The notes below the pieces were generated by a model. The model did no database searches and was not told the origin of the DNA. It was given only the letters and a program-made list of their open reading frames with translations. The position numbers were made by a program, and so were the translations under genes. Below, in pieces: positions 1 to 44,919 of a DNA stretch of 64,000 nt. The number at the start of each line of letters is the position of its first letter. The stretch's first letter is position 1. Origin of the DNA: Macrostomum lignano (lineage: Eukaryota); the NCBI GenBank assembly GCA_002269645.1, contig NIVC01000989.1, positions 1-64,000 on the forward strand. The letters are read 5' to 3'.

Positions 1-3000
1 CACGCTTGAGTGAACACGAACAATAGGCTCTGACCTCATAAATCTTGATGGCCTGTCAAAATGATGAGAAAAAAGCTACCGCCCGCATCCTCTCAGACCA
101 TCTGGCGCGCCTCAACACTGAGTGAGGCGCAGGTGGCTGTCAGACCAGCTTCGAAAGCGATGATTTATGACCCAAAAAGCTGCGCCTATGTTATTATGAC
201 TACTAGTATGACCAAACATTATATCTAGTATAGATTCTATGACAATTCGCAGAAAAATGATAAAAATGCCCATTGCCCACTGTTAGTAGGCTAGTAAGTT
301 TAGAGCCGTGTGCTAGCGCGGGTTTGGAAAAAGCGCGGCCTCATCAAAAGCTTGCTGACATCTGAGAGGTTTTCTATTGTACTGCCTTCTATCAATACTC
401 CTGTTCATATACTCAGTTGTACGCTCGCATATTGCTTTATCTACTGTTTTTTACTCGCATGTGCAAAGTTTTTTAGTTTATCATTATAGTGCCAGCTGCT
501 CCATGCAAAAGTTAAATACTACTCTCCACCAAGGGGGCGATGCACAAATGATAGCATCAAATGCAATTTGCGAATAATAATTTAGGGTATACTCGTAGCC
601 TGAAAACCTGGATCTCTCAATGAAAAAACTGAAGAATAGTACCCACGTTGTATAAGCCAAGAACAGCAAAGTTTTGAGCAATAAAACTGACTCTGATCTC
701 TCCGAAACAAACACCGAATGTTAAATAATGACGTCAGCAGACTTTAAAGCTGTTAGCAGGCAGTCGCCTTTGTAAAACTCGTTTGAGACACTTTCTATCT
801 ACTGAGAGAACTCGGCGAACTTTGCCTGTCTGGATGAAGCTGAAGCTGAAAAATGATGACGGAGATTAAAGGCACAAAAACTTGCACAGTTCGTAACTGA
901 ATTTCATAAATATATTATGATTACACTGTAGCGCTGGCTATCAAAAGATGAAGAAGACTGATTAAGTTGAGCGAAAAGTTAAATCTCGGCTGGGGGCGAT
1001 TGCGTCTATTTAATAAAAATAAAGTACAGTTAGTTTGGGGCTGCAACCGTAAGTTCGAGTTTGGGCCATAGACAACCTAGCTTGTGGGCAGTCAAAGAAA
1101 GTACTTTTTATGAGCTGCATGAGCTGTATATTCTGTGGAATGCAGTCATATTTGCGAAGGACGGCTGCACCTAAAACTTGCTGCGTAATTTGCAGTTTGT
1201 TCTGTGTAGCCTATAAGAGTTTACGTTCCCACGCGCCTGTTTGGCAGTGTTTTAAATAAAAAGGAGAGACAGTGGAGGCGCTCGCTTCACTTTTCTCTCG
1301 CCCGCATCTGCGGGCCTAAAGGCATGGCCATTGCCTCGGCTGGGCTGTAGGCCGCAGCAGCCTGGGCCCAGAAAAACCGTGCTTCGAGTTCACTTCTTTG
1401 TTATCCGACGTGAGCAGAAGGTGCAGGATGGACGCAAAATCGTACCTGTTACAATGGTTCCCTGACCGCGTGAGTCTGCTAGATGAAGTTCCTGTCGCAA
1501 AGGATAACGGAGGGTCGAATAGAAGCCGGTTGAGGACAGCACAACATCAGCAAATCGAGATCCGGCGACCAGAGGACATCTTGCGTCGTTGGCGTGCTTG
1601 ACGGCATTAAGTCGCAACCGGTGGTTCAGTTCAACTGCCACCACGGTGCAGCCGCCGCCCAAACTGACGCGTGTTCAACAGCCGTTCGGATGGATCGACA
1701 AGAAGAGTCAGCCCGACGTCACTGTCTCGGCGACCGGCATGCAGATCAATTTTCCTGCCCTGAGGAGACCGAATGAACGCAGACCGAATGAGACGAATGA
1801 ACGCAGGGACCGTGGGAAAAAAGTCGCTACAACACCAATAGATTAGAAAATCTTGCTTACAACTCGATTGTCTAAAAAAAGAAGGTAGAATTCTCGCAAT
1901 CGAAGACAGACGGAGGGCTTAACTTTAAAGGCCGATGTGATGGATCCTGGCAGTTATTTTTATAACATAAACTGAGAGTGGGTCTTTATAGAAAAATTCT
2001 TAAAAGAAAGCTCCATTTCTCAGGTTCGCTTTTATCTTTGAGAAAGTTAAAACTCGGACAGCCTGCTGCTTTTCTGATTAATTATTTGATTTGCAGCCAG
2101 ACATAAGTTGGTTGTACGTCAATCCAAGATAGTAATAAACACAAGTAAATTGTATCTTTTACGGATGTTTCTCTTATCTATTGACTTTTCATAGAGCAGC
2201 ACCAATAGTTTGGCGCCCTGGTGATGAACCCCGATGCAATTGTCTCCGACCAGGAGAAACCGGGCCTGGCGCGAAGCACACCTCCCTCAGAAACGTCTTG
2301 AATTCAGCTCGCGCGGTACCTCAATTAAGGACACTGGACGAGCTGAGTTCTTCCTTACCGCCGGCGAGGAGGACCGGCGAGACCGACAGATCCTCCTGAC
2401 AAGTTTTTGGTCACCAGAGACTGGCGGAATGGGGATTCTCCTCCGCCGCCACGCTGCATCCGCCAGTTGATGCGACCCCTGCAAGCTATAAGTTAAGTAA
2501 TTTAAGAGGCTCCCTGCGTCACTCTTTGTCCTTGCAAGACCCCTGCCACTTCCGTCAGGTGGAGGCCCCCTGCGCACTCACCGTTATAGTGAGGCCAGGT
2601 AAGGTACACCGTTTGAGGAAAGTCAGGAAAATGAAAGGAGGCTCACCATAGTGAGGCTATAATAGTAGTTATAGTGAGGCTCACCACGTCACTCTGCGTT
2701 TTTTGTGGCTCCCTGCCATACTATCCGTCGTGGTGAGGCTCCCTGCTTCACTTTCCGTTGTGCTGCGACTCTTAAAATCCTTATTATTTGTTAAGGTCTT
2801 AAAAGTATGTGCTCGTTTCTTCTGACCTACTTCAATATCCGTTTAAGTTTGACCTCGCATTCAATTTGTTTGTGTGCCACTTCATAGTCAGTCATTATGC
2901 AATTCTGACTAATCGCCTCTCTTTTATAAGCATATTCCGCGGTGCTTTATATTGCTTGTATTTTAACATCAGTGTCCATTCGGAATGATAGATTCCTGCA

Positions 3001-3130
3001 TGGAAAATCAGCCGACAATGCCATTTCGCTCAAATTCTGTCTAAATAAACTTAAAAACATCACATGATTTATGAACATCACAAAATCTGAAGCCTTTGAA
3101 TACAAGAAGCAAAGTTTAGGAACTTAAGTA

Positions 3131-4349
3131 CACCATTTTACCTCCTATTTTGAACAAAGTCTTGTTCATAAGAAACAAGCAGAACTTCAATTCAAACACT
3201 TTAAGAAATATCAGCGCTTGCGGAACTTCAATTCAAACAAAGTCCCTTTCTATTGAAACAGAAGAACTTCAATTCAGACTGTCTGTGGCCAAAATTGTCC
3301 CCGAGTGACGCGCATGTGCAGATTTGAAATTCAAAATAAACAAAGTCAAATTCACATTCGACAGAGATTTTTGCACATACATTTAGATACGAGAGTACAT
3401 TTTAGTACATTAATATAATTTTTTTTCCTGTACAGAATAACTGTACAATCGTTGCGCAACAAGAAACGATATGAACGCTGAAGATCAGATTGAAAAAGAC
3501 GATGAATTGCTGAAAGATGGAATCGATTAATTTGAAGCAGATTCGATGAAGATATCATGGAACAGCAGCCTCGGAAGTACGCAATTGTAAGCAACAGTGA
3601 CAGAGACTGTATCATCAGGGCTGCTGATCGTGAGGGTGACTTTGTGGAACTGGCGCGCCAACTTGAGTCAAGAGGTCAACAGCGTACACGATTGTGAGGT
3701 CAGGGAGAGCGGAAAAGCAGCCTACGAGATTCCGGACACCATTCAGGTCAAGCGGCTTCCACCCTACCACCATTTTGACTCCTGTGTGGAGAACTTAATC
3801 TCTGTTGGAAGGCCGCTATGAAGAGAGCAGACCAGCAAAATTTTATCGCTCCGACAGCTGAGTAGCACGGCAATCAGTCGATGGCGGCCTATCGGCGAGA
3901 CATTCTGTCATGCTGGACAGAACAATTGGCTGCATCTCTGTGGACAAGAGCACTGAGGGGTTCAACCATGTGTTTACATACGTCCCTCGCTGCCTTGGTG
4001 TTGGTGGACAGGCAATTGATGGTTAGATGTCTCAAGTTGGCCAACTGACACTGTCTTGTTCCTGTTTTTAATTTTACTCTTTATGTTCGTCGATATGCTG
4101 TGTTTTATCCCTTTGTCGAAATAAAATGTGACTTTGTTTCTTTTGAATTTCAAATCTGCGCATGCACGTCGAGTCATTCGGGGACAATTGGCCACAGACA
4201 GTCTGAATTGAAGTTCTTCTGTTTCAATAGAAAGGGACTTTGTTTGAATTGAAGTTCCGCAAGCGCTGATATTTCTTAAAGTGTTTGAATTGAAGTTCTG
4301 CTTGTTTCTTTTGAACAAGACTTTGTTCGAAATAGGAGGTAAAATAGTG
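3131..4349 (+). mobile_element. Non-autonomous, internally deleted Tc1/mariner (IS630-Tc1-mariner) DNA transposon with ~230-bp TIRs
   Basis: 3131-~3360 is the reverse complement of ~4116-4349 (ends CACCATTTT / AAAATAGTG). TA flanks both sides (3129-3130, 4350-4351). The interior has broken transposase remnants: N-terminal HTH-like RKYAIVSNSDRDCIIRAADREGDFVELARQL, a degenerate LPPY...VEN catalytic-E motif, WKAAMKR, and C-terminal FNHVFTYVPRCL. Confidence 0.8.
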
Positions 4350-5043
4350 TAGTAAGATTAACTAGCTCCGTCATCAAGCAGATTTTTTAGCATTAAACAG
4401 CATGGACCAGTCTCTTGTTTTGTGATAACTCTGTCAATTGAAAATCCAACCTCATAGTCCAAGCTTCCAAAAACCTACACTTCCCTACCTCTTATGCTCT
4501 TCCAGAGAAACTCCCTGAAAAGATTTCTGCTGATGAAAAGTCGTCCAGTTCGTGCACCAGACGCCCGATTGAACACTCAGCAGAATCGCATCTACAACTA
4601 CAGGCTGCTTCATTCTCCATCATCAGTGACGGTGCCAGCATCCGCGGTCCCCTACAGTACAGTGGCCAGCAAAGTCGCGTTAACAGTGGAACAAGAAGAA
4701 CTTTAAAAGCGGATACCATTAACGAACAGAAACAAAGTGCTTGCCACTAGATCAGTGAAGCGCAATATGTTATAGCTGTATTGTCATTTATCTACGCTCG
4801 TAGTTAGCGCATAAACGCTTTGTTGAAAGCCTTTGACAACAAGTCAAAGAGCTCCTTTTCTATGCCGCACCCACGGGCCAGAGTAAAAACGTTCCACTTG
4901 GTTTACTCGTACTAAAATAGTATAGTCTGGAAAAACTATTCGATTTGTCAAGCACGCCGATTCTAAAAAATAGCAATTCGTGATAAGGCAAAAAAATGAA
5001 GATTCACAGCTAAATCAAACAGCTAATTCACAACCATCAGCTG

Positions 5044-6577
5044 TCACACAGCAGAACCAGTTGAAACTCGGTAAAGACTGATGGAATCTCTATTCGGTTG
5101 GCACACGGCAAGCAGCTCGGAGTGGCCTTCAACGATGGCCAAGCCACACGGATTGTGCATTCTGTCCCCGCAACTGCCAGCCTCACCCTCGACTCCGACA
5201 GTCTGCAGCACAGTGCCGTCACTACGCATCATTCGTACCACATGCCTATCAAACTCGCTGACGAACAACAGACCTAAGCGATGAGCTGCGACTCCTGCAG
5301 GACTCTGAAGCTCATCAAGACGACTTCGCTTGGTCGGGTAGGTCGAGATCAGCTGACCGCTGGCGATGCACACTTTGTAGAGCTTTTGAGCTTCATAATC
5401 AGTGATCAGCACCGCATGGTCAATGACCGATGTGGATTCGTAGAAGTTATTAATAGAAGGCACGCAACCGACGAAAATGCAGGTCTGCAGCTGGCCGCTG
5501 TCTTTGTCGATGCACAGCAGCTGCATTTCCGAGCCGCTTTTGTCCAGAGCAATTATCTTGTCAGAGCTGCAGGTCAGCCCCATAAATCTGACAGACCGTA
5601 CGCCGAGGCTGCTCGAGTTGAACTCGAGTGAAACCTGACCGCTCAGGTCCGACACCTTGACCACGTTTTTCTGCGAGATGTACAGAGCTTGGCGCTTGCT
5701 GTCACAGCTGAGTCCTGTGATTAGCTTGGACCAGTCGAGGTCAACCCGAACTTTCAGCCTCACGGATCCGTCAATCGAACACGCGAGAAAATAATGTAGT
5801 TTTGATAGTGGATAAAAAGCTACAAACAGACACGGCTCGGGAAGCATCTGTGCACCATCGACCGCAGACTCCGCCTTCACCACTTTGCTGCCTGAAGCAT
5901 CAGGGGAGAAGCCCTTCGTGTTGCTGCAGCATGAAACCCAATCAGGCGAACCATCGAGTCCCTGGATCTCGCTGTGGAACTCACAAATGCTCTGCTTCTC
6001 GCTCAGCGGACCAACACTCTCGCACAGCTGCATCACATCGCTCAGCTGCCTGTCAATCAGCAGCTGCAAGTCTCTCACGCCTCCGCTCACGTCGCCAATG
6101 TCTCTGCCGACTTGCTCAAAGCTGTCTCTCTTTTCATCCAAGTCGCCGCACTCCGCACTCACTGCAGCTGAGAGTGAGAGCAATGTCTTCAGGTCAGCAT
6201 TGGCCTCAGCTTCAGTAAGGCCAATCTCATACTCCTGCAGCACTGACAGCTCATTCAGCTTTTGCAGGCTGCTCTCATGTCTCACAGTCAATCGGTTGAG
6301 CACAGATTCCTTGTAGGTGAGCAGCGACTCCACAGCCGACTCGAACAGCTGCTCGACGCTCTGCAGCTCGGCTGCAGCGCTCGCTGATGAACTCGAAGGC
6401 CGTCTGCAGACTCTTCAGCGGCTGCAGCTGCTCGAGCGCCTTCTGTGCGAGGTGGCGCACCGCGGCAGCGTCCTGAGCCAGGTGTCTTTCGCACAGGGGC
6501 TCTGGGAGGCGAACGCCGGTGCCGGTCGGGACAGCGCTGCAGCCTCTGATGAAGCAGCTCGGGCTCGAGTCAGACAT
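5044..6577 (-). CDS. NHL-type beta-propeller / coiled-coil protein with N-terminal CX4CX15CX2H finger, copy 1 (two 1-bp deletions as assembled)
   Basis: ORFs 6275..6577 and 5044..6333 join into ~511 aa if the two bases present in copy 2 are restored (near 6375 and 6405). NHL-like blades include [26 protein letters not shown] and [14 protein letters not shown]. Confidence 0.75.
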
Positions 6578-7344
6578 TGTGCTTGAAGAATGGCGCTGAA
6601 AATTTGCAAAATCGTTTTGATACTTTGAATGCGCCTGGCTAAAATGCTTTTATAGTTGTTTCGAGCACGACCAGCTTAGTGACTTTTACAACACAGGAAG
6701 GGGATGTCAGCTTAGTCGAAATACCAGAGCAGATTCTGCTCTGAATCCCATCTGATTGTGTAGAGTATCATTAATTAAAAAATGCTACTATTAGTACAAT
6801 AATGCAAACATGAGGAGCAAAACTTAATCTATGAGCTAAGTTACTATTTTTATCGAAAACTATGAAACATCTATTTATAACAAAAAGAGGAATTGTGTAC
6901 GATATACACGATATATACCGAAAGGATGGTTTAGGTTGCTATTTATATTTCGCAAAACTTGTCTATAAATACAAGCGAAAAATCCGAGCTGAAATCTCAG
7001 ACTCGGAGCAGCCTCGACTTGAGCACACCCAGGAACTACGAGGCTACATGTACATCTCTGAGAGAAGTAGATGCCGTTCGGTAAGCCTTTGTTCAAGTTT
7101 TCGTTATTTGATTATTGAGAGCGATTTTATTGACGGCCGTTACTGTTCAGTTGAATTTACTGAATTTTTTTGAATTTGAGGCCTCCCTATTCCTAAGGGA
7201 TTGGATAGGATCTGCGGACCGATTCCAATACCCTTAGAGGATTATCAATTGATGATTTTGGTACCCTAGAGTAACCGATAGGGGCAACGACTCCGATTCC
7301 GTTATTTAAAGAAGAAGACGCCCTTTCTTGAGAACCTCGAATCT

Positions 7345-8290
7345 GTGTTTAAAAAGAAATTTGTCAAACAGCAGCACAACAGTAACAGCTCTGAAAGCTT
7401 CTTTATTTCACGCAACATATTGGCAGCTGCGGTAAAAGTAAACGCAATTGTTATCTAAAGTACGTTACTACTAAAATATCAATAAAACCAACTGCAAGAC
7501 AGCAGAAACCGGTACATTAGCTTGGCTGGTACATATTTGGAAGTTTAAAATTCAATAAAAGCTATCACAGATATTATCAGGACTCATAAAGCCTCCAATA
7601 TTAGATGAGACAGATGAGTAGAAATGCATGCAATTGAGCACTGTCAAGCATCAGATTTGCAACAACTCACATGGTAAAGTCAAACACTTGAGAATGCTTT
7701 GAGTCTGAACAGAACAGATACAAATCATATTTTATTGGAGCACGGCTTAACAAATAAACTCTAACAGCAACTTTGAGTAGCCTCAAGCGGCAGAAGCTCT
7801 GATGAGACAAAAATCTGGGCCAGCATTCATGTTTAGAATGTCACCTGATTATTCGCTTATTCTTCACTTATTCACGAAGGTAGCCAGAATAACCTGGTAG
7901 TTTAGAAGTTAAACCCACAGATGAACCTCCTGATCAATCATAATCACAGATTAACTCTACTAGCAGATTGGTGTCACCTCAGTTTGTGAGAGGAAAACCA
8001 AATCAACGCGCCAATGTAAAGTCTGCTAACAGAATTCACGAAAATTGGCTGCGGTATGTCAAAGTGCCGCAGATGCTTCGAGTTTGTAACTGAAATTTTG
8101 AAATTTGGCAAAGCATAACAATTTCGTAAAGCAGATCCATTTAAAAATCAAAGACGAGCTCATTTTCTATTCTGTGCTCACAGCTGCGGTAAAAAAGCTC
8201 CAATTAATTGGTCCACATGCAGATTATAAAAATAAAAATTTGTTTCAGCAAAAACATGGCGATAACAGGTAAATTCACAATCATCCGCCG
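7345..8290. repeat. Intergenic segment duplicated at ~10255-11150 (part of the tandem duplication unit)
   Basis: Shared blocks such as aactgcaagacagcagaaaccggtacattagcttggctggta (~7490 and ~10390), ccagcattcatg and cagatccatttaaaa are colinear but visibly diverged. Confidence 0.85.
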
Positions 8291-9828
8291 TCAATCAGCA
8301 GAACCAGTTGAAACTCGGTAAAATCTGATGGAGAGGCTTTCTTCCTGGCACACGGCAAGCAGCTCGGAGTGCCCTTCAACGATGGCCAAGCCATACGGAT
8401 GGTTTATTTTGTCTTCGCTACTGTCAGCCTCGCCCTCGACTCCGACAGTCTGCAGCACAGTGCCGTCACTACGCATCACACGAACCACATGATTAAAACA
8501 CTCGCTGACGAACACCAGACCGAGCGATGAGCTGCGACTCCTGCAGGACTCTGAAGCTTATCAAAACGACTTCGCTTAGTCGGGTAGGTAGAGATCAGCT
8601 GACCGCTGTCAATGCACACTTTGTAGAGCTTACCAGCTTCCCAATCGGTAATCAGCACCGCATGGTCGATGATCGACATGGATTCGTCAAATATTTGTCC
8701 ATAAGGCACGCCACCGACAGAAACGCAGGTCTGCAGCTGGCCGTTGTCTTTGTCGATGCACAGCAGCTGCATTTCCGAGCCGCTTTTGTCCAGAGCAATT
8801 ATCTTGTCAGAGCTGCAGGTCAGCCCCATAAATGTGACTGGCCGTCCGAGGCTGCTCGAGTTGATCTCGAGTGACACCTGACCGCTCAGGTCCGACACCT
8901 TGACCACGTTTTTCTGCGAGATGTACAGAGCTTGGCGCTTGCTGTCACAGCTGAGTCCTGTGATTGGCGTGAACCAGTCGAGGTCGACTTGAACTTTCAG
9001 CCTCACGGATCCGTCAATCGAACACGCGAGAAGGTAATCCAGATCGGATCCAAAAGTAAAAGCTACGAACAGACACGGCTCGGGAAGCATCTGTGCACCA
9101 TCGACCGCAGACTCCGCCTTCACCACTTTGCTGCCTGAAGCATCAGCGGAGAAGCCCTTCGTGTTGCTGCAGCATGAAACCCAACAGGCGAACATCGAGT
9201 CTTGGATCTCGCTTGGAACTCACAAATGCTCTGCTTCTCCTCGCTCAGCGGACCAACACTCTCGCACAGCTGCATCACATCGCTCAGCTGCCTGTGAATC
9301 AGCAGCTGCAAGTCTCTCACGCCTCCCGCCTCCACTCACGTCGCCAATGTCTCTGCCGACTTGCTCAAAGCTGTCTCTCTTTTCATCCAAGTCGCCGCAC
9401 TCCGCACTCACTGCAGCTGAGAGTGAGAGCAATGTCTTCAGGTCAGCATTGGCCTCAGCTTCAGTAAGGCCAATCTCATACTCCTGCAGCACTGACAGCT
9501 CATTCAGCTTCTGCAGGCTGCTCTCATGTCTCACAGTCAATCGGTTGAGCACAGATTCCTTGTAGGTGAGCAGCGACTCCACAGCCGACTCGAACAGCTG
9601 CTCGACGCTCTGCAGCTCGGCTGCTAGCGCTCGCTGATGAACTCGAAGGCCGTCTCGCAGACTCTTCAGCGGCTGCAGCTGCTCGAGCGCCTTCTGTGCG
9701 AGGTAGCGCACCGCGGCAGCGTCCTGAGCCACGTGTCTCTCGCACAGGGGCTCTGGGAGGCGAACGCCGGTACCGGTCGGGGCAGCGCTGCAGCCTCTGA
9801 TGAAGCAGCTCGGGCTCGAGTCAGACAT
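8291..9828 (-). pseudogene. NHL propeller / coiled-coil gene, copy 2 (multiple frameshifts; chimeric)
   Basis: Homologous to copies 1 and 3 over its full length. It has a 7-bp tandem duplication near 9325, four 1-bp deletions at ~9185-9213 and one near 8521. No nonsense substitutions were seen in the reconstructed frame (~511 aa). Confidence 0.7.
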
Positions 9829-11322
9829 TGTGCTTGAAGAATGGCGTTGAAAATGTGCAAAAAGTTTTCAATATATCGAATGCGCCAGGCTAAAATGATT
9901 CATTATTGTTTTGATAGAAAATGGATCAGCTGCGGGAGACACTGCATCAGCATTGCGCAGGACCAGCTCAGGGACTTTTACAACACCGAAAAAAGATGTC
10001 AGCTTAGTCGAACTACCGGAGCGGATTCTGTGCCGAATCCCATCGGATTGGCCACGAGGGTGCAGAGTCATAGAAAATCCCAGGTCTCAGCCTCAGTAGG
10101 TTAATTGGGGAGAACATAAGAAATCTTAAGTATCTGAGAGCTTGAGTTTTTTTAATTTACCTCATCAAATGATGCCTTCAGCTTAGCTCAGTCTTGAGGG
10201 GTTTCGGATCTACTCAGCTGGCACTTGTTGCTCTGTCTGATGCTGATTGCATGATCGTGTTTAAAATGAAATTTGTCGAACAGAATCACAACAATAACAG
10301 CTCTGCAAACTGATGTATTTGAGGCAACATTGGCTGCTGCTGGTAAAAGTACACGCAGTTAGCTAAAACTACACAAAAAATCAATAAACCCAACTGCAAG
10401 ACAGCAGAAACCGGTACATTAGCTTGGCTGGTAAAGATTTGGAAGTTTTAAAATTCAATAAAAGTTATCACAGATGTCATCAGGACTCATAAAAACCTTC
10501 AAGATTCGTTTGCTCGTAGTACAGATGAGTAGCAATGCATGCAATTGAGCACTGATCAGGCATCAGATTAGCAACAACTCACATGGTGCAGTCAAACACA
10601 TGAGAATGCTTTGAGTCAAACTGTCTGAGCTGAATTAAAAAGACGTCAAACAAAGCCTTACGAAGCTGGCAGCCTTGGTTCTTCATCAGAGCAGCGCCTG
10701 AACTGCGCTGAGTTCGTCGGCAAATCAGATGATGTTTGAGCTCGGCCTAACAAATAAAATCACACAGCCAAAATCTAGAGCCAGCATTCATGTCCGGAAT
10801 GCCACCTGATTTACTCGCTAATTCAACACTCATTCACCCAGGTAGCCAGAAGAACTTAGCTGCCACCAAGTTAAACTCCCAAATGAAACGCCCATTCATA
10901 TTCAAGCAAAATCTAAATTTAATAATCAAATAATCAAAATTTGATTATTTATAATAATTAATAAATCTAAATCTAAATCAGCAACAGCGAACAACTTGTA
11001 ACAGCGAAACCATATCAACGCCTAAATGCAAAATCTGCAACCAGATTTCACCAAGTTTGGGACTGAAATTCTCAAAATTGGTGAAACAGATCCATTTAAA
11101 AGTCAAAGACGAACTCATTTTCTCTGCTGAAGTCATGGTTAAGGTAAAAATCCGCTTTGTTATACAAAATTACTACTGTTACCAGGCACAAATTCTAAAA
11201 CTATAATGGTCAAGCTTCAATTCATGTGTCAAAACACGCAGAGCATAAAAATAGTACATTTTGATAAAGCAAAAACATGCAGATGCAGAGCTGAATCGAA
11301 AGGTGATTTACAGTCATTTGTG

Positions 11323-12872
11323 TCATACGGCAGAACCATTTGAAACTCGGTAAAATCTGATGGACAGTCCTTCCTGCTGGCACACGGCAAGCAGCTCTGA
11401 GTCGCCTTCGACGGTGCCCAAGACACACGGACAGTGCATTTTGTCTCGGCCTCTGCCAGCCTCGCCCTCGACTCCGACAGTCTGCAGCACAGTGCCGTCA
11501 CTTTGCATCACACGAACCACATGCCTATTATACTCGCTGACGAACACCAGACCTGAACGATGAGCCACAACTCCTGCAGGACTCAGAAGCTCATCAAGAC
11601 GACTTCGGCTTGTCGGGTAGGTCGAGATCAGCTGACCGCTGACGATGCACACTTTGTAGATCTTTTTAGCTGCCCAATCAGTGATCAGCACCGCATGGTC
11701 GATGACCGACATAGATTCCGAGCGATCTGGGGAACTGGGCACGCCACCGGCAGAACCGGAGGTCTGCAGCTGGCCGCTGTCTTTGTCGATGCACAGCAGC
11801 TGCATTTCCGAGCCGCTTTTGTCCAGAGCAATTATCTTGTCAGAGCTGCAGGTCAGCCCCATAAATCTGACAGGCCGTCCGAGGCTGCTCGAGTTGATCT
11901 CGAGTGACACCTGACCGCTCAGGTCCGACACCTTGACCACGTTTTTCTGCGAGATGTACAGAGCTTGGCGCTTGCTGTCACAGCTGAGTCCTGTGATTGG
12001 CGTGGACCAGTCGAGGTCGACTTGAACTTTCAGCCTCACGGATCCGTCAATCGAACACGCGAGAAGGTAATCCAGATCGGATCGCAAATCAAAAGCTACG
12101 AACAGACACGGCTCGGAAGCATCTGTGCACCATCGACCGCAGACTCCGCCTTCACCACTTTGCTGCCTGAAGCATCAGCGGAGAAGCCCTTCGTGTTGCT
12201 GCAGCATGAAACCCAAGCAGGCGCACCATCGAGTTCTTGGATCTCGCTGTGGAACTCACAAATGCTCTGCTTCTCCTCTCTCAGCGGACTAACACTCTCG
12301 AACAGCTTCATCACGTCCTCGAACTGCCTGTCGATGCTCAGCTGCAAGTCTCTCAGAGCTCCGCAAACGTCACCCAGCTTCAGTCGTCCTTGTTCGTCTC
12401 CACCAGACACAGCGTTTTCGAGATCGCTGCACTCCAGCTCCATGCGAGAGCACTGCTCAAAGATGCCTCGAAGATTGTTGGCGCTTTCCGCCGCTGCCAT
12501 CGAGCTGTCGAACTCCTGCAGCACTGCGAAGTCGCTCAGCTTCTGCCTTGCTGCGTCAGTTGTGGCAGTGAGTCGATTCGTAACAGCTTCCTTGTGCTTC
12601 ATCAGCGACTCAATGGCGGCATTGAGCAGATCCTCAGTGACCTGTAGCTTCGCTTCTAGCGCCTGCGAGTCCATTCTTAGCAGGTCGCGAACGAGCCTCA
12701 GAGGCTGCAGCCTCGCTTCGACTCTGGCATGAATTTCGCGCACTCTGTCGGAGTCTCGGTCCAGGTGTCTCTGGCACAGAGGCTGCAGTGTCTGAGCTCC
12801 GGTGCCAGCAGCTGCTTCGCTGCAGGTGGCCAGGGAGCAGCGCCGACTGCCTGCTTGAGTGGCTTCGGTCAT
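11323..12872 (-). CDS. NHL propeller / coiled-coil gene, copy 3 (single G missing in a homopolymer)
   Basis: ORFs 12096..12872 and 11323..12087 join into ~516 aa if GG at 12115-12116 is GGG, as in copies 1 and 2. Confidence 0.8.
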
Positions 12873-14809
12873 GGCTCATCTGAGCTGAAGAGGAGAGTTT
12901 GGAGATGCTGAGGCATTGTGGAGCGTGTGCTCAGGGAACTGCAGAAGCTGCACTTTTAGTCCGATGGAGGGGCTCAGGAACTCATTTAGGACAAATGCTG
13001 ACGTATTTCAATAATGGAACCATTTTGATTCAAAGTTTGTTGCAACTAAAAATGATTAATTCTACCCCTCTTTTCACTTATCGTCCATCATTCATTTAAA
13101 TTTCTATGGTGTGTCACTTACACTTTTTGTGACACATCTGGCCGGCATTTATTGGAAAATGCTTGTTCTTGCTTGCCTGTTATAATGAATAACAGAAATG
13201 AGAATTCAAGTTGAGAATTTGAGTCAAAACTTATGGATGAAACTTTCGAGATAGTTGCAGCAGTAGTCATGAAGATTAGCGAGGCTTAGCTAAGTTACCA
13301 GCTTGAAATATATTACAGACAGTTTATAATACACAAACCAAATTGTATAAATTATTCAAAACAAAAAAAGTTAAACAATAAAAATGTTGGAACATTTAGA
13401 CTAAGTTACTACAGTGTGTCTGAAAATCGATATTGATAATATACTGATAATATTATAATTTTAACAATTATATTATTATTTTCATAATATTAACGTATAA
13501 TCTATTATATTAATAATAGTATAATTATCAGTAAAAAAAATTATATCTAGCTACAATGACTGCAAGTAATAAAACAGCATTTGTAAATAAAATAAGAAAC
13601 ATTATTTAATATTTCAGTCTAACGAATTTCTGCCTGTGCATTTTTTATTTTAAAAGATAAAGAAAATTAAATATTTGAAAACCTGACCATTTAAAAAATA
13701 TATTGTCTTCATTTATGCATACAGACAGGTAAATCTAAAATTATTAGTGACTTATTTAATCGACAGACTACAGATTACAGACTGTTTGTTTATCAATATT
13801 AATTAATATTGTAATGATAAGTCAATTAAAATCGCCAGCTTATGCGTTCTATTTTGACTAAGTTAGCTTTTTTGTTCAAAATTATATTACAAATCGATTC
13901 ACAACGCAGTCAAAGGTTAACATTAATTATTGCATACAAACAATGTCTTGGTTTGAAACTCAAAACAGATTAATAATAATAATATAAAATAATCATAAAT
14001 AATCATATAAAATGATAATAATAAAAATTAATAATTTGCATGTAAACGACTAGTATATTGTATTAGTTACTAGTCCGCAGCAGCCATACTGAGTGCTATC
14101 TTAAATAGTATACTCGTCCGACTTCGGGTAAAGATTCGAAAAACTTAACCCGAATAAGGTATCATGTTAAATGCGTGCGCTCTAATGAAGCAGTGTATAA
14201 GTAAAACAAAAAGTTGAATTCCTATAGATTTACACGTCAATTTTTCAAGATACAGTACAGGTATAGCAATATCTTTCACACGGTCAGAATTAGGAAACAG
14301 CTTTCCAAAATATGTTTTTTTTCTTTCGCACCAACGAGTCACAGGCTTTACCTGCATGTGTAAACAATCAATCAAACACTAAACTGGACATTTGTATGAG
14401 GAGCTGGTGGATGTACATGTACTCGTAACTTTGTTTAGACGTTTAATGGTCTTTGTCCGGCTATACGCAATCGAAGTCCATATATGCAACCAATGAAATT
14501 GTTTACTTGAACGATGTACATGTTGAGAATAAGGACCATGCAGATAGCAAAGACAGACAAACGGAGAGAATAAATGTGCAAGAATATTCATTTGATTGAG
14601 CTTGAAAGGGAAGATCAGGGAAGAAAGAGTTCCAATACCACTCGAGGAGCCAATCAGCTGTCAGCAGCCCTTATAATCCTCATCAGCCGACCAAGGCAAA
14701 ACGGATCAAATATACGAAGCCCCGATCAGACGAAAAAAAGAGCGAAAATACTCTAACGCCCTCGTGCGAAAGGTTTTACTTTTCTCAGCTCAACCTCCAC
14801 CGCTCAAGG

Positions 14810-15532
14810 ATGTCTCTCCACAGTCTGCCCTCAGCAACTCCAAACGCCACCGATCACCGCTCCTCATTCGTCTCCTGCTCCGTCAGCAGCCCCTACAAAC
14901 TCTCCCATCGCCTGCTGCTCGCCTCCCTCGGCTCTCTGCTTGCCGGCTACGTAACCTTCGTCAACGCGGCCATCTTTGCCGTCTTCCTTCGCGACCGCAG
15001 CGTCCACCGCGTCCCCGGTCACGTGTTCATCGTCGGCCTGATGGTGAGCAGCGACATTCTTGTTGGCATGCTGGCTCTGCCGGGCTACCTGGTGAGAACC
15101 CTGTGCGGTGGCTGGCCGCTGCCGAAATGGTCCTGCGACCTGTGGATCACGGTGGACTACATCAGCACTAACGTTGGCATGCTGAGCGTGACCACTGTTG
15201 CTTTCGACAGATTTTTAGCTACTAACTTTGTGTTCCTGCACAAGCGATGGATGCACCGCGCCAATCAGCTCCGTCTGTGCGCCGCGGTGTGGCTCGTCAC
15301 CTCCGCCAGGTGCATCGCCACCTTCCCCATGTGGGCCGTGCTGTCCGGCTTCCGGGCCAGGGAGGCTTTCGGTGCCTGCGGCCATCCGATTTACCAGGAC
15401 ACCGCGGCGGGCATTGCACACCGGACGGTGGCCTTGTACATCCCCATCGTGCTGCTGGTCTTTTTTTACGGCGCTGTGGTCTTCCGCATTCTCAAGTCCT
15501 CTCGCGCTTTTGGTGCCACTTCGACCAACGCG
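14810..15532 (+). CDS. Class A GPCR, aminergic/muscarinic-like, exon 1 (TM1-TM5)
   Basis: N-glycosylation NAT, TM1 N, TM2 SDILVG, ECL1 WPLPKWSCDLW, TM3 Asp in VDY, DRF motif. Phase-0 donor GTGAGT at 15533. Confidence 0.9.
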
Positions 15533-15547
15533 GTGAGTCTTGGATAT

Positions 15548-16007
<460 letters not shown>

Positions 16008-16518
16008 AAGTAAGTCCATTACTCGCAATCTGTGATATCATTCCAAAGCCTTTTGTTTAATCTCAATAGGGTGTTCTTGTCGTTCGTGCCGTCTCAATGA
16101 GCCGCCCAGTAATTGGATGAGGATTTTAATTAATTATTTGTTTTTAAGAGACCGAAGGAATAATCAAAGTTTGATAATAATGAACGGGATTGTCTAGTGA
16201 ACTCTGGAACAAAGGCCAAGAGTTAATAAAAGCTAAGAAATAAAATACTCATAAAAGCACGAGCTGTCTTGTCGAATATCTGTTCGGTAATATTCGGATT
16301 TCATCTCCCAAAAGATAAGAAAATATTTCAAGATATTCGAGGATTAAAAAATAGATTTAACAACTGTTCTAGCTTTTCTTTATCATAGAGTTTAATCTAC
16401 AGGTCTATCACGACAAACATATTAAATATGCGATATTTATTGATTATTATTCCAAGATTCATTGATAATAGAATTGTACCATAATTGTAGCATTACAGAA
16501 AGAAAAGCAGTCTGGTAA

Positions 16519-17414
16519 CCAAGAGACAGGGCCGCGCTCACAAAGAGACAGGGGCGACCACCAAGAGACAGGGGCGCCCAACCAAGAGACAGGGGCGCCC
16601 AACAAAGAGACAGGGGGCGCTCACTAAGAGACGGGCGCCCACCAAGAGACAGGGGCGCTCACTAAGAGACGGGCGCCCACCAAGAGACAGGGGCGCTCAC
16701 TAAGAGACGGGCGCCCACCAAGAGACAGGGGCGCTCACTAAGAGACGGGCGCCCACCAAGAGACAGGGGCGCCCAACAAAGAGACAGGGGGCGCTCACTA
16801 AGAGACGGGCGCCCACCAAGAGACAGGGGCGCTCACTAAGAGACGGGCGCCCACCAAGAGACAGGGGCGCCCAACAAAAAGACAGGGGGCGCTCACTAAG
16901 AGACGGGCGCCCACCAAGAGACAGGGGGCGCCCAACCAAGAGACAGGGGCGACCACCAAGAGACAGGGGCCAAGGACTTCTAGACTAACAGGACGTAAAA
17001 CTCAAAGATCGTGCAAGTTTTTGGAGGCCACGATTTCCTGGAAAAAATACACTGCGAAGATAGGAAAAAAAAATAAAGTGAAAACAATATGAAAATGAAA
17101 ACTTCACTACACAGCTATATGAAAATATAATAGAGTAACATATTGTGCATGTTAAATTAAAAGAATGGTAGTCTTCACTGCCCCAGATCAAATACAATCA
17201 CAGATTTTGTGACGAAAAACTGATTTTTTCCTATCTTCGCAGTGTATTTTTTCCAGGAAATCGTGGCCTCCAAAAAATTGTACGATCTTTCAGTTTTACG
17301 TCCTGTTAGTCTAAAAGTCCTTGACAGGGGCGCCCAACCAAGAGACAGGGGGCGCCGACTAAGAGACAGGGGCGCTCACTAAGAGACGGGCGCCCACCAA
17401 TAGACAGGGGGCGC
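16519..17414. repeat. GC-rich minisatellite (ccaagagacaggggcgc... units), interrupted by a MITE
   Basis: Variable ~19-22-bp units at 16519-16970 that resume at 17324-17414. Confidence 0.9.
16971..17323. mobile_element. MITE with ~100-bp TIRs and 8-bp TSD (hAT- or P-like)
   Basis: CAAGGACTT...AAGTCCTTG termini with ~100 bp of near-perfect inverted repeat. ACAGGGGC is duplicated at 16963-16970 and 17324-17331. No coding capacity. Confidence 0.88.
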
Positions 17415-18268: not shown

Positions 18269-18334
18269 CTAGGAAGCGAAGCGTCTTAAAAGTCTTTCAA
18301 ATCAAGTCGTTCACCCACTAAAACCTGATTGCAG

Positions 18335-18973
18335 GCTCGTCAGTCAAGAAGCCCCAATCACCGCTTGGCTGCTGCAGCCTCCTCGCTGCAGGAGAGCTGC
18401 GTGGACACCGCTTCGCAGTCGCTAATAGCTACAGCTGGTGGCAGCGGAGTTAACAGCCGACTCTCCCGTCAGCATGCCGGCGTACATGGACGTCGAAGTT
18501 CAACCCTGGCCAACCGACTAGTGAAATCGTTCCGCATTGTCACCTGCGTACTGATCTCCTTCCTGCTCACCAATATGCCCTGGCAAGTGGTTGAGAACAT
18601 GATCGTCACAGGGACAACCAACCTGACCAGCACAGATTGGCTCTACGTCCTGTTCTGGATACTCAGCTACATGAACGCGTTTCTGAATCCTCTGTTCTAC
18701 TGTTTTATGAACAAAGGATACCGACTGGCCATTGCGCGCTTTCTGAGGTGTCAGTCTGGCCAGCAGCAACTGCAGCATCAGCAGCTTCAGCATTTACTGC
18801 AGCAGCATCACCAGCTGAACCATCAGAGCAGCGGAGGAGGTACTGCAGCAGCTGCTGCACATGGATCTCAACCACAGAAGCCACACCGCCTGGCCTCAGA
18901 TGGTTCAGCAGTGAAGACGCACCCGCGGTCTTACAATAGAGTTGTTCATCTGGCTAGAGGTTCGGCTCCGTGA
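18335..18973 (+). CDS. Class A GPCR exon 2 (ICL3 end, TM6, TM7, C-tail)
   Basis: Acceptor TTGCAG ends at 18334 in phase 0, matching exon 1. TM6 SFRIVTCVLISFLLTNMPWQV and TM7 SYMNAFLNPLFY (NPxxY) follow. The joined protein is 453 aa; AATAAA lies at 19023. Confidence 0.88.
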   Translation, partial: ARQSRSPNHRLAAAASSLQESCVDTASQSLIATAGGSGVNSRLSRQHAGVHGRRSSTLANRLVKSFRIVTCVLISFLLTNMPWQVVENMIVTGTTNLTSTDWLYVLFWILSYMNAFLNPLFYCFMNKGYRLAIARFLRCQSGQQQLQHQQLQHLLQQHHQLNHQSSGGGTAAAAAHGSQPQKPHRLASDGSAVKTHPRSYNRVVHLARGSAP

Positions 18974-26215: not shown

Positions 26216-26413
26216 GAGAGAGACCAATTTTAGACGGGACAGAACATACGACGGATCCAGCCAGTGTAAATTGTGGCAGACCAAAGGTAAGACACAAAAG
26301 TCTGCAACTTTGATGCAAAAGCAACAGTGGATTAAATAAATCAAGACTCTGATTTCGTCAAACTCTTAGTCATCAAGTAAGAGTCTAAGCACATGAAAAA
26401 ATGAAAAACTTAC

Positions 26414-27005
26414 CACCAGCCTCCCTAGCTTCTCCACCAGTTTTAGGCACTGGTTCTCTCGTATCCATAGCAACCGGCTCGTTCTCGCTGTTGCTATTAA
26501 CAACGCCTAAAAGAAATTCGTCATTACTACGAAGAGGCTGATCCTCGTCAACTGACAGCCACTGGCATCCAGTCCAGGGTTCCTGTTCGAGCAGCCGCTG
26601 GCAGACTCGGTAGCTCTGCTCCCTACGCTGACGAGCTTCCGGAGTCTCCTGTCGAGCGAAGCGCAGAGTGACGGCTCTGGCAGCGTCTGCATCGTCGCCA
26701 GCTGCACCAGCATTCGACTGCTGCTCGGTCGAAGATTTTGCTGCCGCCGAGTCCAGATGCTCCAGCACAGGCTGCATTACTAGTCTAGCCGTAGACGAGA
26801 TCGGGCAAAGAGTCAATCTGTTGTCATGGAAACGGGCCACAACGAAACGATTTTGCTGTTGCTGACCAGCTTTGGGCATTGAGCGGAGCAGCTGACGGTC
26901 AAACTGACCGCGTGGAAACTGCTCTGGGGCCAGCTGGCCCAGCTCTTGGCCTCGGTGGCGCTCGTAGTTGGGCGACTTCGTGTCCACTGCGAGTGACAGC
27001 TCGGC
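26414..27005 (-). CDS. POLR3E: RPC5 coding exon 4 (Sin-like N-terminal domain)
   Basis: Contains AELSLAVDTKSPNY, RLTLCPISSTARLVMQPVLEHLD and AVTLRFARQETPEARQRREQSY...QEPW, typical RPC5 motifs. GTAAGT donor in phase 1. Confidence 0.92.
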
Positions 27006-38262: not shown

Positions 38263-38346
38263 TAGGAAATCCTAGGAAATATCAAGCACCTCTAACACAG
38301 CTACTTTTTCTTAGAAATCAGCCCCTTGAAACTAATTCTCATTTAC

Positions 38347-44566: not shown

Positions 44567-44919
44567 GTAAGGCGTTGCCGTGTTGCCGTGAAAGCGCGTT
44601 GATAAGTTGCTGGATGGTCTTTTAGGGTGAGCTAAAGGAAAGATCGTAGGCAGAATGGATGAATAGAAACTTATGTAAACCAGATGTTTCTGCCTAGCAG
44701 GTGTTTTAGACTTCGAACAGAAAGAGACACTCTGGAGACCCAAAATGAAAAGTTCCAATCCGATACGAACAACTGAGAAAGAGACTGCCACAGATGGCTA
44801 AATAGAACCTTAGTTTGTTTAATCAATGTCCTATTTTCGCGCAAATTTAAACTACAAGTAGCTGACGAGCTTGAGTGGCACCTGTCTAGCATTATCCGAG
44901 AGACTTTCTCATCTAACAG

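What the first reader, a model, noticed from the sequence alone, without database searches (positions are those of the whole stretch)
5044..12872. Tandem intronless NHL-propeller family with identical frameworks and hypervariable loops: candidate diversifying recognition/immune receptor system
Seen: three paralogues share nucleotide-identical blocks of about 90 nt (e.g. 5499-5587 and 5633-5722 and their equivalents), while duplicated intergenic DNA has clearly diverged. Between these blocks, short patches differ radically: YPLSK/TFGSD/DLRSD; SKL/FTP/STP; [42 protein letters not shown]; DYEAQ/DWEAG/DWAAK; EFDR/ECFN/EYNR; [33 protein letters not shown]; QPNRDS/QEESLS/QQEGLS. Known: in NHL propellers, the loops after the TD/SE strand and before the P-G-A turn form the top face that binds ligand (RNA in Brat/LIN-41). 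Inferred: homogenised scaffold plus diversified binding face is the pattern of antibody-, LRR- or TRIM-like recognition families. I do not recognise this architecture (small Zn finger, coiled coil, propeller, no RING) as a described family.
Basis: partly seen in the sequence, partly recalled or inferred. Interest (0 to 1): 0.82.

Follow-up and report, generated by a model that had tools for sequence, protein, structure and literature searches.

The report
Flatworm NHL-propeller gene array with variable loops
Three tandem copies (one probably dead) of a Macrostomum lignano-specific gene family encode a coiled coil plus an NHL propeller; gene conversion has kept the propeller framework almost identical between copies, while the loops on its likely ligand-binding face differ sharply, which is suggestive of diversified recognition but is not proven to be selected or immune-related.

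Summary
Window 5044-12872 holds three tandem, single-exon paralogues on the minus strand. They share three-way identical blocks at exactly the stated coordinates (5633-5722 and 5499-5587), and substitutions between them are strongly clustered.

The organism is the flatworm Macrostomum lignano. The proteins have a short Cys/His motif, a long helical coiled coil and a six-bladed NHL propeller. They lack a RING and a detectable B-box. They belong to a large expansion found almost only in M. lignano and annotated only as "hypothetical protein".

- **Copies 1 and 3:** the breaks are private to the window and look like assembly indels.
- **Copy 2:** it is probably a true pseudogene.

The identical framework comes from gene conversion or recombination. 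For copies 1 and 3, dS is about 1.15 in the 5' third and about 0.15 in the rest. Short conversion tracts also differ between locus versions.

Amino-acid variation sits on the top-face loops (51% of those codons, against 10-13% elsewhere). Synonymous changes cluster there too, and loop dN/dS is about 1 (0.8-1.5, with confidence intervals spanning 1). Diversifying selection is therefore plausible but unproven, and an immune role has no evidence either way.

Verdict: a new variant of a known kind, of moderate interest.

The parts
5044..6577 (-). Copy 1 gene: single exon, 511 aa once two window-private 1-nt deletions (after 6406 and 6376) are restored. It equals NCBI protein PAA-type 'BOX15_Mlig005855g1'.
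   Evidence: P0001 is 100% identical to the repaired translation. The gene is an intact ORF on GenBank contig NIVC01001356.1.
8291..9828 (-). Copy 2: a probable pseudogene. Its 5' half is copy-1 type and its propeller is closer to copy 3.
   Evidence: The window has a 7-nt insertion at 9328-9334 and 1-nt deletions after 9214, 9203, 9194, 9185 and 8522. Two of the deletions are shared with L001. The L002 version has CAA>TAA at codon 156 plus another 1-nt deletion. No protein for it was returned by the protein searches.
11323..12872 (-). Copy 3 gene: single exon, 516 aa once one window-private 1-nt deletion (after 12117) is restored. It is 98.4% identical to 'BOX15_Mlig034286g1'.
   Evidence: It is intact on NIVC01004574.1.
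6482..6556 (-). Copy 1 N-terminal C-x4-C-x15-C-x2-H motif (CFIRGC...CERH), a putative single zinc site.
   Evidence: The four ligand residues are invariant in all aligned family members. There is no Pfam B-box or RING match. Coordinates checked.
6019..6490 (-). Copy 1 predicted helical coiled-coil region (P0001 residues 36-193, three helices).
   Evidence: AF2 DSSP gives H36-133, H136-150 and H153-193, at low pLDDT.
5062..5991 (-). Copy 1 NHL six-bladed beta-propeller (P0001 residues 203-512).
   Evidence: AF2 pLDDT is mostly 75-91 per 10-residue block. Foldseek matches TRIM3, Thin, TRIM2 and TRIM71 NHL domains. phmmer against PDB gives 3.9e-9.
5633..5722 (-). 90-nt block identical in all three copies (equivalents 8876-8965 and 11909-11998).
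5499..5587 (-). 89-nt block identical in all three copies (equivalents 8745-8833 and 11778-11866).
5788..5814 (-). Variable patch YPLSKLHYF / TFGSDLDYL / DLRSDLDYL, in the loop between strands 256-261 and 270-274.
5425..5481 (-). Largest variable patch, [19 protein letters not shown], in the d-a loop between blades. Its core is 14/18 nt different between copies 1 and 3.
5380..5397 (-). Variable patch YEAQKL / WEAGKL / WAAKKI (b-c loop).
5245..5253 (-). Variable patch FDR / CFN / YNR (b-c loop).
5134..5178 (-). Variable patch [15 protein letters not shown] / DSSEDKINHPYGLAI / GRGRDKMHCPCVLGT (d-a loop and start of strand a).
5074..5097 (-). Variable patch PNRDSISL / EESLSIRF / QEGLSIRF (b-c loop of the last blade).
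6070..6080 (-). Approximate recombination or conversion breakpoint in copy 1 (equivalents about 9326 in copy 2 and about 12355 in copy 3). Upstream, copies 1/2 and copy 3 differ at 46% of sites. Downstream, they differ at 10-11%.
   Evidence: Maximum chi-square 234-259. dS is 1.15 upstream and 0.15 downstream.
6596..6598 (-). CAG of a ttttcag acceptor-like site 18 nt upstream of the copy 1 ATG. The annotated transcript and protein start immediately after it. Copy 3 has tcttcag at 12885-12887. Copy 2 has CAA at 9847-9849.
   Evidence: That it is a trans-splice site is inference.

Best explanation
This is part of a tandem array of at least four copies, three of them in the window. The genes belong to an expanded family found almost only in Macrostomum lignano. 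The family descends from, or converges on, the TRIM-NHL architecture but lacks the RING and B-box.

Each protein has a short Cys/His motif, a long coiled coil of about 160 residues and a six-bladed NHL propeller. It has no signal peptide, so it is presumably cytoplasmic. Without a RING it cannot itself be an E3 ligase. It most likely acts as a dimeric adaptor whose propeller top face binds a ligand, either RNA or protein.

The array evolves by concerted evolution. Recombination or gene conversion has placed nearly the same propeller-coding 3' ~1.03 kb on two anciently diverged 5' 'chassis' (copy 1/2 type and copy 3 type). Short conversion tracts continue to move small segments between neighbouring copies.

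What stays different between copies is concentrated in the b-c and d-a loops of the top face, so paralogues should differ in binding specificity.

**Shown:**
- the fold and the family
- the gene conversion
- the clustering of variation on one face
- the likely pseudogene state of copy 2

**Inferred:**
- dimerisation and cytoplasmic location
- ligand binding by the top face
- functional consequences of the loop differences

Whether the loop divergence is driven by selection is unresolved. dN/dS is about 1 against local dS, and 1.8-3.3 against framework or whole-region dS.
For: **Organism and family**
- P0001 and P0002 are M. lignano hypothetical proteins, 100% and 98% identical to repaired copies 1 and 3.
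- An exhaustive profile search finds 23 clusters at 50% identity with E<1e-30. All those looked up were from M. lignano except two clusters from short metagenome contigs.
- Sister arrays of 6 and 5 copies sit on two other contigs.

**Fold**
-.

**Transcription**
- The GenBank gene models are RNA-seq derived (PMC5730564).

**Frameshifts as errors**
- The window and NIVC01001356.1 are 99.2% identical, and 83 of their 108 differences are indels.
- The breaks in copies 1 and 3 are absent from that contig.

**Gene conversion**
- Between copies 1 and 3, the part up to codon ~199 has dS 1.15 and 57% nt identity, while the rest has dS 0.15 and 89-91% identity.
- In the 5' part, copy 1 is closer to the sister subfamily (51% aa) than to copy 3 (41.5%). 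The propeller shows the reverse.
- The maximum chi-square breakpoint lies at about 6075 / 12355.
- The L002 version of copy 2 carries 6 sites over ~45 nt that are shared only with copy 0, and 5 sites that are copy-3 type.
- The sister subfamily also has near-identical nucleotide blocks at residues 78-137, 176-190 and 355-369.

**One-face variation**
-, with the face defined in PMC4015489.
- The same positions vary in both subfamilies (odds ratio 3.2, p=8e-4).
- Loop dN/dS is raised relative to the rest in both subfamilies: 0.77 against 0.24-0.37 in B, and 0.8-1.3 against 0.1-0.6 in A.
Against: - There is no functional or expression-pattern information. The gene ids were not found in the supplementary tables of four M. 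lignano papers, one of whose files was truncated when stored.
- The NHL Pfam profile is below threshold (13.8 against 20 bits).
- The coiled coil is a low-confidence prediction.
- Top-loop net charge is about neutral (+1, -8 and -1 for the three copies). RNA-binding TRIM-NHL domains have an electropositive top face, so RNA binding is not indicated (this is a crude count).
- Face assignment rests on strand order from DSSP, not on inspected 3D coordinates, and blade 1 could not be assigned cleanly.
- Only three to four copies of this subfamily were available, and one is a pseudogene.
Confidence: 0.6

Rival explanations
1. Neutral mosaic. The long top-face loops are simply weakly constrained, and gene conversion works only where purifying selection has kept enough identity, that is in strands and tight turns. 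Conserved blocks therefore become identical while loops drift apart. No diversifying selection or recognition function is implied.
For: - Loop dN/dS is about 1 against local dS, with confidence intervals spanning 1.
- Synonymous-only changes cluster next to amino-acid changes (26% against 3.9% of codons, p=1.6e-6).
- Top-loop dS is 0.20-0.33, against 0.06-0.12 in strands.
- In the sister subfamily the homogenised blocks lie in the coiled coil rather than the propeller, so patchy homogenisation is not tied to a 'framework versus binding face' logic.
Against: - dN in the top loops (0.27-0.30) exceeds framework dS (0.08-0.09), whole-region dS (0.11-0.15) and alignable intergenic divergence (0.17). 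The ratios are 1.8-3.3 with confidence intervals above 1.
- The core of the largest patch is 14/18 nt different. That is more than in the anciently diverged 5' part, which differs at 43% of sites.
- The same positions are hypervariable in two independent subfamilies.
Confidence: 0.3
2. This is an intracellular immune or pathogen-recognition receptor family, analogous to TRIM5 or finTRIM but NHL-based. Diversifying selection maintains different binding faces on a homogenised scaffold.
For: - The family is a tandem expansion found almost only in M. lignano.
- Variation lies on one face.
- Loop dN exceeds the neutral yardsticks if the 3' region has a single age.
- Short conversion tracts shuffle loop variants between copies.
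- TRIM expansions in other lophotrochozoans are commonly read as immune (PMC8460440).
Against: - There is no significant omega>1 by any non-circular test.
- The patches are stable, nearly all 100% identical (96-98% for one), between locus versions that differ by ~1-3%, so there is no sign of ongoing hypermutation.
- There are no induction data, no signalling or effector domain and no RING.
- One copy is decayed.
Confidence: 0.15
3. A decaying pseudogene array, or an assembly artefact. On this view the interrupted frames are real and the pattern has no functional meaning, or the identical blocks were created by collapse or polishing of paralogues.
For: - All three frames are interrupted in the window.
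- Copy 2 carries independent disabling lesions in two locus versions, and its acceptor-like CAG has become CAA.
- The published assembly is known to be redundant and hard to assemble (PMC5730564).
Against: - The breaks in copies 1 and 3 are absent from the GenBank contigs, where both genes are intact ORFs with RNA-seq-based models.
- After repair of the indels there is no in-frame stop in any window copy.
- dN/dS in strands and bottom loops is 0.1-0.6, which indicates purifying selection.
- Blocks and patches are reproduced in three independently assembled versions of the locus.
Confidence: 0.07

Closest known systems
TRIM-NHL proteins (Brat, Mei-P26, LIN-41/TRIM71, TRIM2, TRIM3, TRIM32/Thin, NHL-2)
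   Same: They share a coiled coil followed by a C-terminal six-bladed NHL propeller. These are the best sequence and structure matches. As in LIN-41, the first strand after the linker appears to complete the last blade (PMC5908797). In this class the top face is the known ligand (RNA) surface (PMC4015489).
   Different: - The window genes have no RING, no detectable B-box and no filamin domain.
- The Pfam NHL profile is sub-threshold.
- Top loops are not net positive.
- The genes are single-exon, tandemly arrayed and amplified almost only in M. lignano, whereas TRIM-NHL genes belong to the conserved 'group 1' TRIMs with few members per genome (PMC2533329; PMC4015489).
Rapidly evolving TRIM arrays with B30.2/PRY-SPRY domains (TRIM5/TRIM22 cluster, fish finTRIM/btr; 'group 2' TRIMs)
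   Same: Both are lineage-specific tandem paralogues with a coiled-coil chassis and a C-terminal recognition domain whose surface loops carry most of the variation. Gene conversion occurs among neighbours (this point is from general knowledge). Group 2 TRIMs are described as young and dynamic in PMC2533329.
   Different: - The recognition fold here is an NHL propeller, not SPRY.
- There is no RING effector.
- Positive selection and antiviral function are established for those families but not shown here.
Concerted evolution with preserved variable segments in multigene families (for example MHC, KIR, plant NLR LRRs)
   Same: The array shows a homogenised framework, divergent short segments that encode a binding surface, and short conversion tracts that shuffle variants between paralogues.
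   Different: This is a resemblance of evolutionary mode only. There is no homology, and selection for diversity is not demonstrated here.

Membership tests
TRIM (tripartite motif) family | N-terminal RING finger | tested here: not met
   Only 7 residues precede the first Cys. There is no RING match in Pfam for the full proteins or the N-terminal segments.
TRIM (tripartite motif) family | B-box zinc finger | tested here: not met
   No zf-B_box hit appears even at E<=10 for 8 diverse N-termini. An invariant C-x4-C-x15-C-x2-H motif could be a remnant. UniProt labels two distant relatives 'B box-type domain-containing'.
TRIM (tripartite motif) family | Coiled-coil region following the zinc fingers | tested here: inconclusive
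   AF2 predicts helices 36-133, 136-150 and 153-193, but with pLDDT about 35-60. Dimerisation cannot be tested.
NHL-repeat beta-propeller domain | Six-bladed propeller fold similar to solved NHL domains | tested here: met
   pLDDT is mostly 75-91 per 10-residue block across residues 205-512, with 26 strands. Foldseek matches TRIM3, Thin, TRIM2 and TRIM71 at E 1e-14 to 1e-12 and TM 0.72-0.75.
NHL-repeat beta-propeller domain | Sequence match to the NHL repeat | tested here: inconclusive
   Pfam PF01436 scores 13.8 bits against a gathering score of 20. phmmer against PDB NHL domains gives 3.9e-9 (Thin) and ~1e-6 (TRIM2, TRIM71).
RNA-binding TRIM-NHL subclass | Electropositive top surface that binds RNA | tested here: inconclusive
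   A crude count in the top loops gives K+R versus D+E of 13/12, 8/16 and 13/14. No surface electrostatics or binding assay was possible.
Diversifying recognition/immune receptor families | Lineage-specific tandem expansion | tested here: met
   There are at least 4 copies at this locus, 11 in sister arrays and 23 clusters family-wide. All clusters looked up were from M. lignano except two from short metagenome contigs.
Diversifying recognition/immune receptor families | Variable residues concentrated on the ligand-binding surface | tested here: met
   51% of top-loop codons vary, against 10% of bottom-loop and 13% of strand codons. All 9 patches lie in b-c or d-a loops by strand order. The 3D position was not inspected.
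Diversifying recognition/immune receptor families | dN/dS significantly above 1 at those residues | tested here: inconclusive
   - Structure-defined top loops give 0.82-1.33, with confidence intervals spanning 1.
- Subfamily B gives 0.77.
- Cross-defined sites give 1.45 [0.83-2.99] and 0.73 [0.52-1.08].
- Values of 1.4-1.9 appear only for patches chosen by their variability, which is circular.
- Against framework dS the ratio is 2.9-3.3 with confidence intervals above 1, but this assumes one age for the region.
Diversifying recognition/immune receptor families | Induction by, or action against, pathogens | not testable with these tools
   The gene ids are absent from the supplementary tables of four M. 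lignano expression papers, one of whose files was truncated when stored.
Concertedly evolving tandem array (gene conversion) | Discordant divergence or phylogeny along the same gene pair, and paralogue-derived tracts that differ between haplotypes | tested here: met
   dS is 1.15 against 0.15. Affinities to the sister subfamily are reversed between the two parts of the gene. A breakpoint test supports a junction. Tracts derived from copy 0 and copy 3 are present in the L002 version of copy 2.

The most novel reading that the evidence does not exclude
Flatworms of the genus Macrostomum have built a diversified intracellular recognition repertoire on an NHL propeller instead of a SPRY, LRR or Ig domain. 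RING-less coiled-coil/NHL paralogues keep a common scaffold through gene conversion. Selection, helped by short-tract conversion that shuffles loop cassettes between neighbours, maintains different top-face loops that recognise different foreign or selfish RNAs or proteins, such as viruses and retrotransposons.
Probability: 0.15. Interest if true: 0.75.

Novelty: new variant of a known kind. Interest (0 to 1): 0.42.

Why it matters
NHL-type TRIM proteins are textbook examples of conserved, low-copy post-transcriptional regulators. The fast-evolving, arrayed TRIMs known so far use SPRY domains.

A large, tandemly arrayed, RING-less NHL family whose variation sits on the propeller's binding face would show that the NHL fold can also serve as a diversifiable recognition module. 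It would also give the M. lignano model, which has transgenesis and RNAi, a tractable family for studying how gene conversion and loop divergence interact.

Practically, the case also shows that frames in this genome's assemblies cannot be taken at face value. Long-read indels mimic pseudogenes.

Tried and rejected
- **Pseudogene array.** I rejected this for copies 1 and 3 because their indels are private to the window, and kept it for copy 2.
- **Patches as assembly noise.** Rejected. The patches are copy-specific and recur, nearly all at 100% identity, on two other contigs. Only 'SGSAGG' in copy 3 is suspect.
- **Patches imported from the sister subfamily.** No donor for the large patches was found in the 5 fetched sister loci.
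- **B-box or RING remnant.** Pfam gave nothing.
- **Word-index protein searches.** They found only M. lignano proteins. The exhaustive search was needed to see the wider family.
- **Literature.** No paper combines Macrostomum lignano with NHL, and no paper's main text mentions the gene ids.
- **Supplementary tables.** The tables of four expression papers held no entry for these genes, though one file was truncated when stored.
- **dN/dS on variability-chosen patches.** These gave 1.4-1.9, but I discarded them as circular.
- **3D coordinates.** I could not obtain coordinates of the model, so blade 1 and the exact face geometry remain inferred from strand order.
- **Third array.** I did not analyse the P0010/P0011 group, because its paralogues are under 50% identical (dS saturated) and its proteins could not be looked up.

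Full report
**What is there**

Window 5044-12872 contains three head-to-tail paralogues on the minus strand. Their repeat periods are about 3.25 and 3.03 kb.
- Copy 1 runs from the ATG at 6577 to the stop at 5046-5044.
- Copy 2 runs from 9828 to 8291.
- Copy 3 runs from 12872 to 11323.

These limits are exactly the coordinates of the finding. No other copy lies elsewhere in the window. The same locus on a GenBank contig continues to a fourth copy beyond the window's left edge (L001 16260-17411).

**Organism and assembly quality**

The proteins identify the source as the flatworm Macrostomum lignano.
- The repaired translation of copy 1 is 100% identical to 'hypothetical protein BOX15_Mlig005855g1'.
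- Copy 3 is 98.4% identical to 'BOX15_Mlig034286g1'.

In the window itself all three reading frames are interrupted.
- Copy 1 lacks one base after 6406 and one after 6376.
- Copy 3 lacks one base after 12117.
- Copy 2 has a 7-nt insertion and five 1-nt deletions.

GenBank contig NIVC01001356.1 covers window 1-12440 at 99.2% identity. Of the 108 differences, 83 are scattered indels in both directions, and the breaks in copies 1 and 3 are absent from the contig. Copy 3 is also intact on a second version of the locus that is 97% identical (NIVC01004574.1). After repair no window copy has an in-frame stop. The published assembly is PacBio-based, redundant, and annotated from RNA-seq (PMC5730564).

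I conclude that the breaks in copies 1 and 3 are assembly indels and that both genes are transcribed.

Copy 2 is different.
- Two of its deletions are shared by the window and the GenBank contig.
- The other locus version has an independent CAA>TAA stop at codon 156 plus another deletion.
- In all three versions the acceptor-like ttttCAG upstream of the ATG reads CAA.
- No protein for it was returned by the protein searches.

It is probably a real pseudogene.

**What the protein is**

Pfam finds only a sub-threshold NHL repeat. phmmer against PDB sequences hits the NHL domains of Thin/TRIM32 (3.9e-9), TRIM2 and TRIM71 (about 1e-6).

An AlphaFold2 model built on eight family members gives three parts:
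- a disordered N-terminus;
- three long helices (36-133, 136-150, 153-193) at low confidence;
- a well-predicted beta-propeller from about 203 to 512, with pLDDT mostly 75-91 per 10-residue block.

Foldseek places the propeller with TRIM3, Thin, TRIM2, TRIM71 and Brat NHL domains (E 1e-14 to 1e-10, TM 0.72-0.75).

The N-terminus carries an invariant C-x4-C-x15-C-x2-H motif. Neither a RING nor a B-box can be detected. The architecture is therefore TRIM-NHL-like with the RING and B-box missing. It is not an unknown kind of protein.

The genes are single-exon, in a genome that averages about five introns per gene.

**Family size**

An exhaustive profile search found 23 clusters at 50% identity with E<1e-30 and the same full-length architecture. 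All 20 clusters looked up were from M. lignano except two from short metagenome contigs. Automated pipelines name a few of them TRIM2/3/71-like, 'RING-type' or 'B box-type'. A sister subfamily about 54% identical forms tandem arrays of six and five copies on two other contigs.

I found no paper on this family.

**The observation itself**

The identical blocks are exactly as stated: 5633-5722 (90 nt) and 5499-5587 (89 nt), plus blocks of 62 and 42 nt.

The clustering of the 138 variable sites in the 954-nt 3' region exceeds all 5000 permutations.
- The longest invariant run is 90 nt, against a permutation mean of 34.
- There are three runs of 60 nt or more, against 0.008 expected.
- The dispersion index is 2.65, against 0.84.

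Intergenic DNA aligns only in pieces, at 82-85% identity.

The variable patches recur, nearly all at 100% identity, in the matching copies on both GenBank contigs, so they are not noise. The exception is 'SGSAGG' in copy 3. It is private to the window and lies where the near-identical contig has indels.

**Why the framework is identical: gene conversion**

Divergence differs sharply between the two parts of the same gene pair.

| Comparison | 5' part (up to codon ~199) | Remainder |
|---|---|---|
| Copies 1 and 3, dS | 1.15 | 0.15 |
| Copies 1 and 3, nt identity | 57% | 89-91% |
| Copies 1 and 2, nt identity | 98.6% | about 90% |

In the 5' part, copy 1 is closer to the sister subfamily (51% aa) than to copy 3 (41.5%). 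In the propeller, copies 1 and 3 are 82-85% identical and both are about 55-60% identical to the sister subfamily. A maximum chi-square test puts the junction near 6075 (copy 1), 9326 (copy 2) and 12355 (copy 3).

Short tracts are still moving. The other locus version of copy 2 carries six sites over about 45 nt that are shared only with copy 0, and five sites in the first patch that are copy-3 type.

The sister subfamily is also a nucleotide mosaic, but there the near-identical blocks are mostly in the coiled coil.

**Where the variation lies**

Using the strand order of the model, all nine patches with three or more changed residues fall in b-c or d-a loops. By definition these loops form the top surface of an NHL propeller, which is the RNA-binding face of Brat (PMC4015489).

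| Structural class | Amino-acid variable codons |
|---|---|
| Top loops | 51% |
| Bottom loops | 10% |
| Strands | 13% |

The differences are significant (p=5e-6 and 2e-9). The same alignment positions are hypervariable in the sister subfamily (odds ratio 3.2, p=8e-4).

Top loops are the long loops of this fold and are expected to be the least constrained.

**Is it selection?**

Patches chosen by their variability give dN/dS of 1.4-1.9, but that test is circular. The non-circular tests give lower values.

| Test | dN/dS |
|---|---|
| Structure-defined top loops, this array | 0.82-1.33, confidence intervals spanning 1 |
| Strands and bottom loops, this array | 0.1-0.6 |
| Top loops, sister subfamily | 0.77, with uniform dS |
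| Rest of protein, sister subfamily | 0.24-0.37 |
| Sites defined in B, measured in A | 1.45 [0.83-2.99] |
| Sites defined in A, measured in B | 0.73 [0.52-1.08] |

In this array synonymous changes are also concentrated in the patches.
- Among codons that keep their amino acid, 26% of those adjacent to a changed residue differ, against 3.9% elsewhere (p=1.6e-6).
- Top-loop dS is two to three times that of the strands.

That is what a mosaic history predicts. The patches are older or separately acquired segments, not point-wise adaptive substitution on a uniform young background.

On the other hand, suppose the 3' region has one age. Then top-loop dN (0.27-0.30) exceeds framework dS, whole-region dS and alignable intergenic divergence by 1.8-3.3 fold, with confidence intervals above 1. 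The core of the largest patch is also more diverged (14/18 nt) than the ancient 5' part.

The data therefore do not decide between weakly constrained loops that escape conversion and loops kept different by selection.

**Function**

Nothing here bears on an immune role.

From sequence and from what is known of TRIM-NHL proteins, I infer a cytoplasmic coiled-coil dimer. It would have no E3 activity of its own, and its propeller top face would bind a ligand. Paralogues should differ in specificity. A crude count shows the top loops are not net positive, unlike RNA-binding NHL domains, so a protein ligand is as likely as RNA.

A notable consequence of the conversion event is that nearly the same propeller is mounted on two very different coiled-coil chassis.

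**Verdict**

This is a previously undescribed, tandemly arrayed, RING-less variant of the TRIM-NHL kind, found almost only in M. lignano, that evolves by concerted evolution with top-face loop divergence. It is unusual for NHL-type TRIMs, which are regarded as the conserved, low-copy group (PMC2533329). The evolutionary mode, however, is well known from other multigene families, and neither selection nor function is established.

Interest is moderate (0.42).

Noticed in passing
window 1-12440 compared with L001 (NIVC01001356.1): The window is a second version of a GenBank M. lignano contig, 99.2% identical. Of the 108 differences, 83 are scattered 1-nt indels in both directions. Open reading frames in this window therefore cannot be trusted at single-base level.
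   Followed up: yes
L001 16260-17411 (beyond the left edge of the window): A fourth paralogue (copy 0) with a copy-3-type 5' half, 82% aa identical to copy 3, cut by the end of the fetched locus. It is the apparent donor of, or partner in, a ~45-nt conversion tract in the L002 version of copy 2.
   Followed up: partly
window 9847-9849, compared with 6596-6598 and 12885-12887: Copies 1 and 3 have a pyrimidine-rich ...tcag acceptor-like site 18 and 12 nt upstream of the ATG, and the annotated copy 1 protein starts right after it. Copy 2 has CAA instead of CAG in all three locus versions. This suggests SL trans-splicing of copies 1 and 3 and its loss in copy 2.
   Followed up: partly
L005 10001-21182 and L007 10001-15302 (sister arrays on NIVC01000989.1): Two annotated gene models (P0004, P0007) span 11 kb and 5.3 kb across neighbouring paralogues and do not translate colinearly. 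P0007 carries an internal duplication. They look like read-through or chimeric transcripts joining adjacent array members.
   Followed up: no
window 14810-15559 and 18329-18973 (+): Two exons of a rhodopsin-family GPCR (Pfam 7tm_1, 9.7e-21 and 3.2e-5). They are separated by about 2.8 kb containing a (GATA)116 microsatellite (15543-16008) and a 20/38/98-nt tandem repeat (16518-16970).
   Followed up: partly
window 41708-44602 (+): A single 964-aa ORF encoding a protocadherin-like protein with at least six cadherin repeats (Pfam Cadherin, 1.7e-66), a signal-peptide-like start and a C-terminal transmembrane segment.
   Followed up: partly
window 33532-34983 (-): A 483-aa ORF with an RNase H domain (2.3e-13). 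It is probably the 3' part of a non-LTR retrotransposon ORF2.
   Followed up: partly
window 26385-26987 (-): An ORF matching RNA polymerase III subunit RPC5 (1.1e-22). It is immediately followed by a (TGAC)372 microsatellite at 27037-28523 that reads through as an artificial 579-aa ORF.
   Followed up: partly
window 16500-64000: The tandem-repeat load is very high, with 37 TRF rows of score 200 or more. Examples are a 36-nt unit x83 at 54763-57718, a 45-nt unit x32 at 36838-38263 and a 21-nt unit x63 at 38870-40200. These repeats account for the strong GC-skew swings in the composition profile and for many spurious long ORFs.
   Followed up: no
window 3129-3352 and 4125-4351: A 229-nt inverted repeat (94% identical) flanks about 770 nt just downstream of copy 1. 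It may be the ends of a small transposable element.
   Followed up: no
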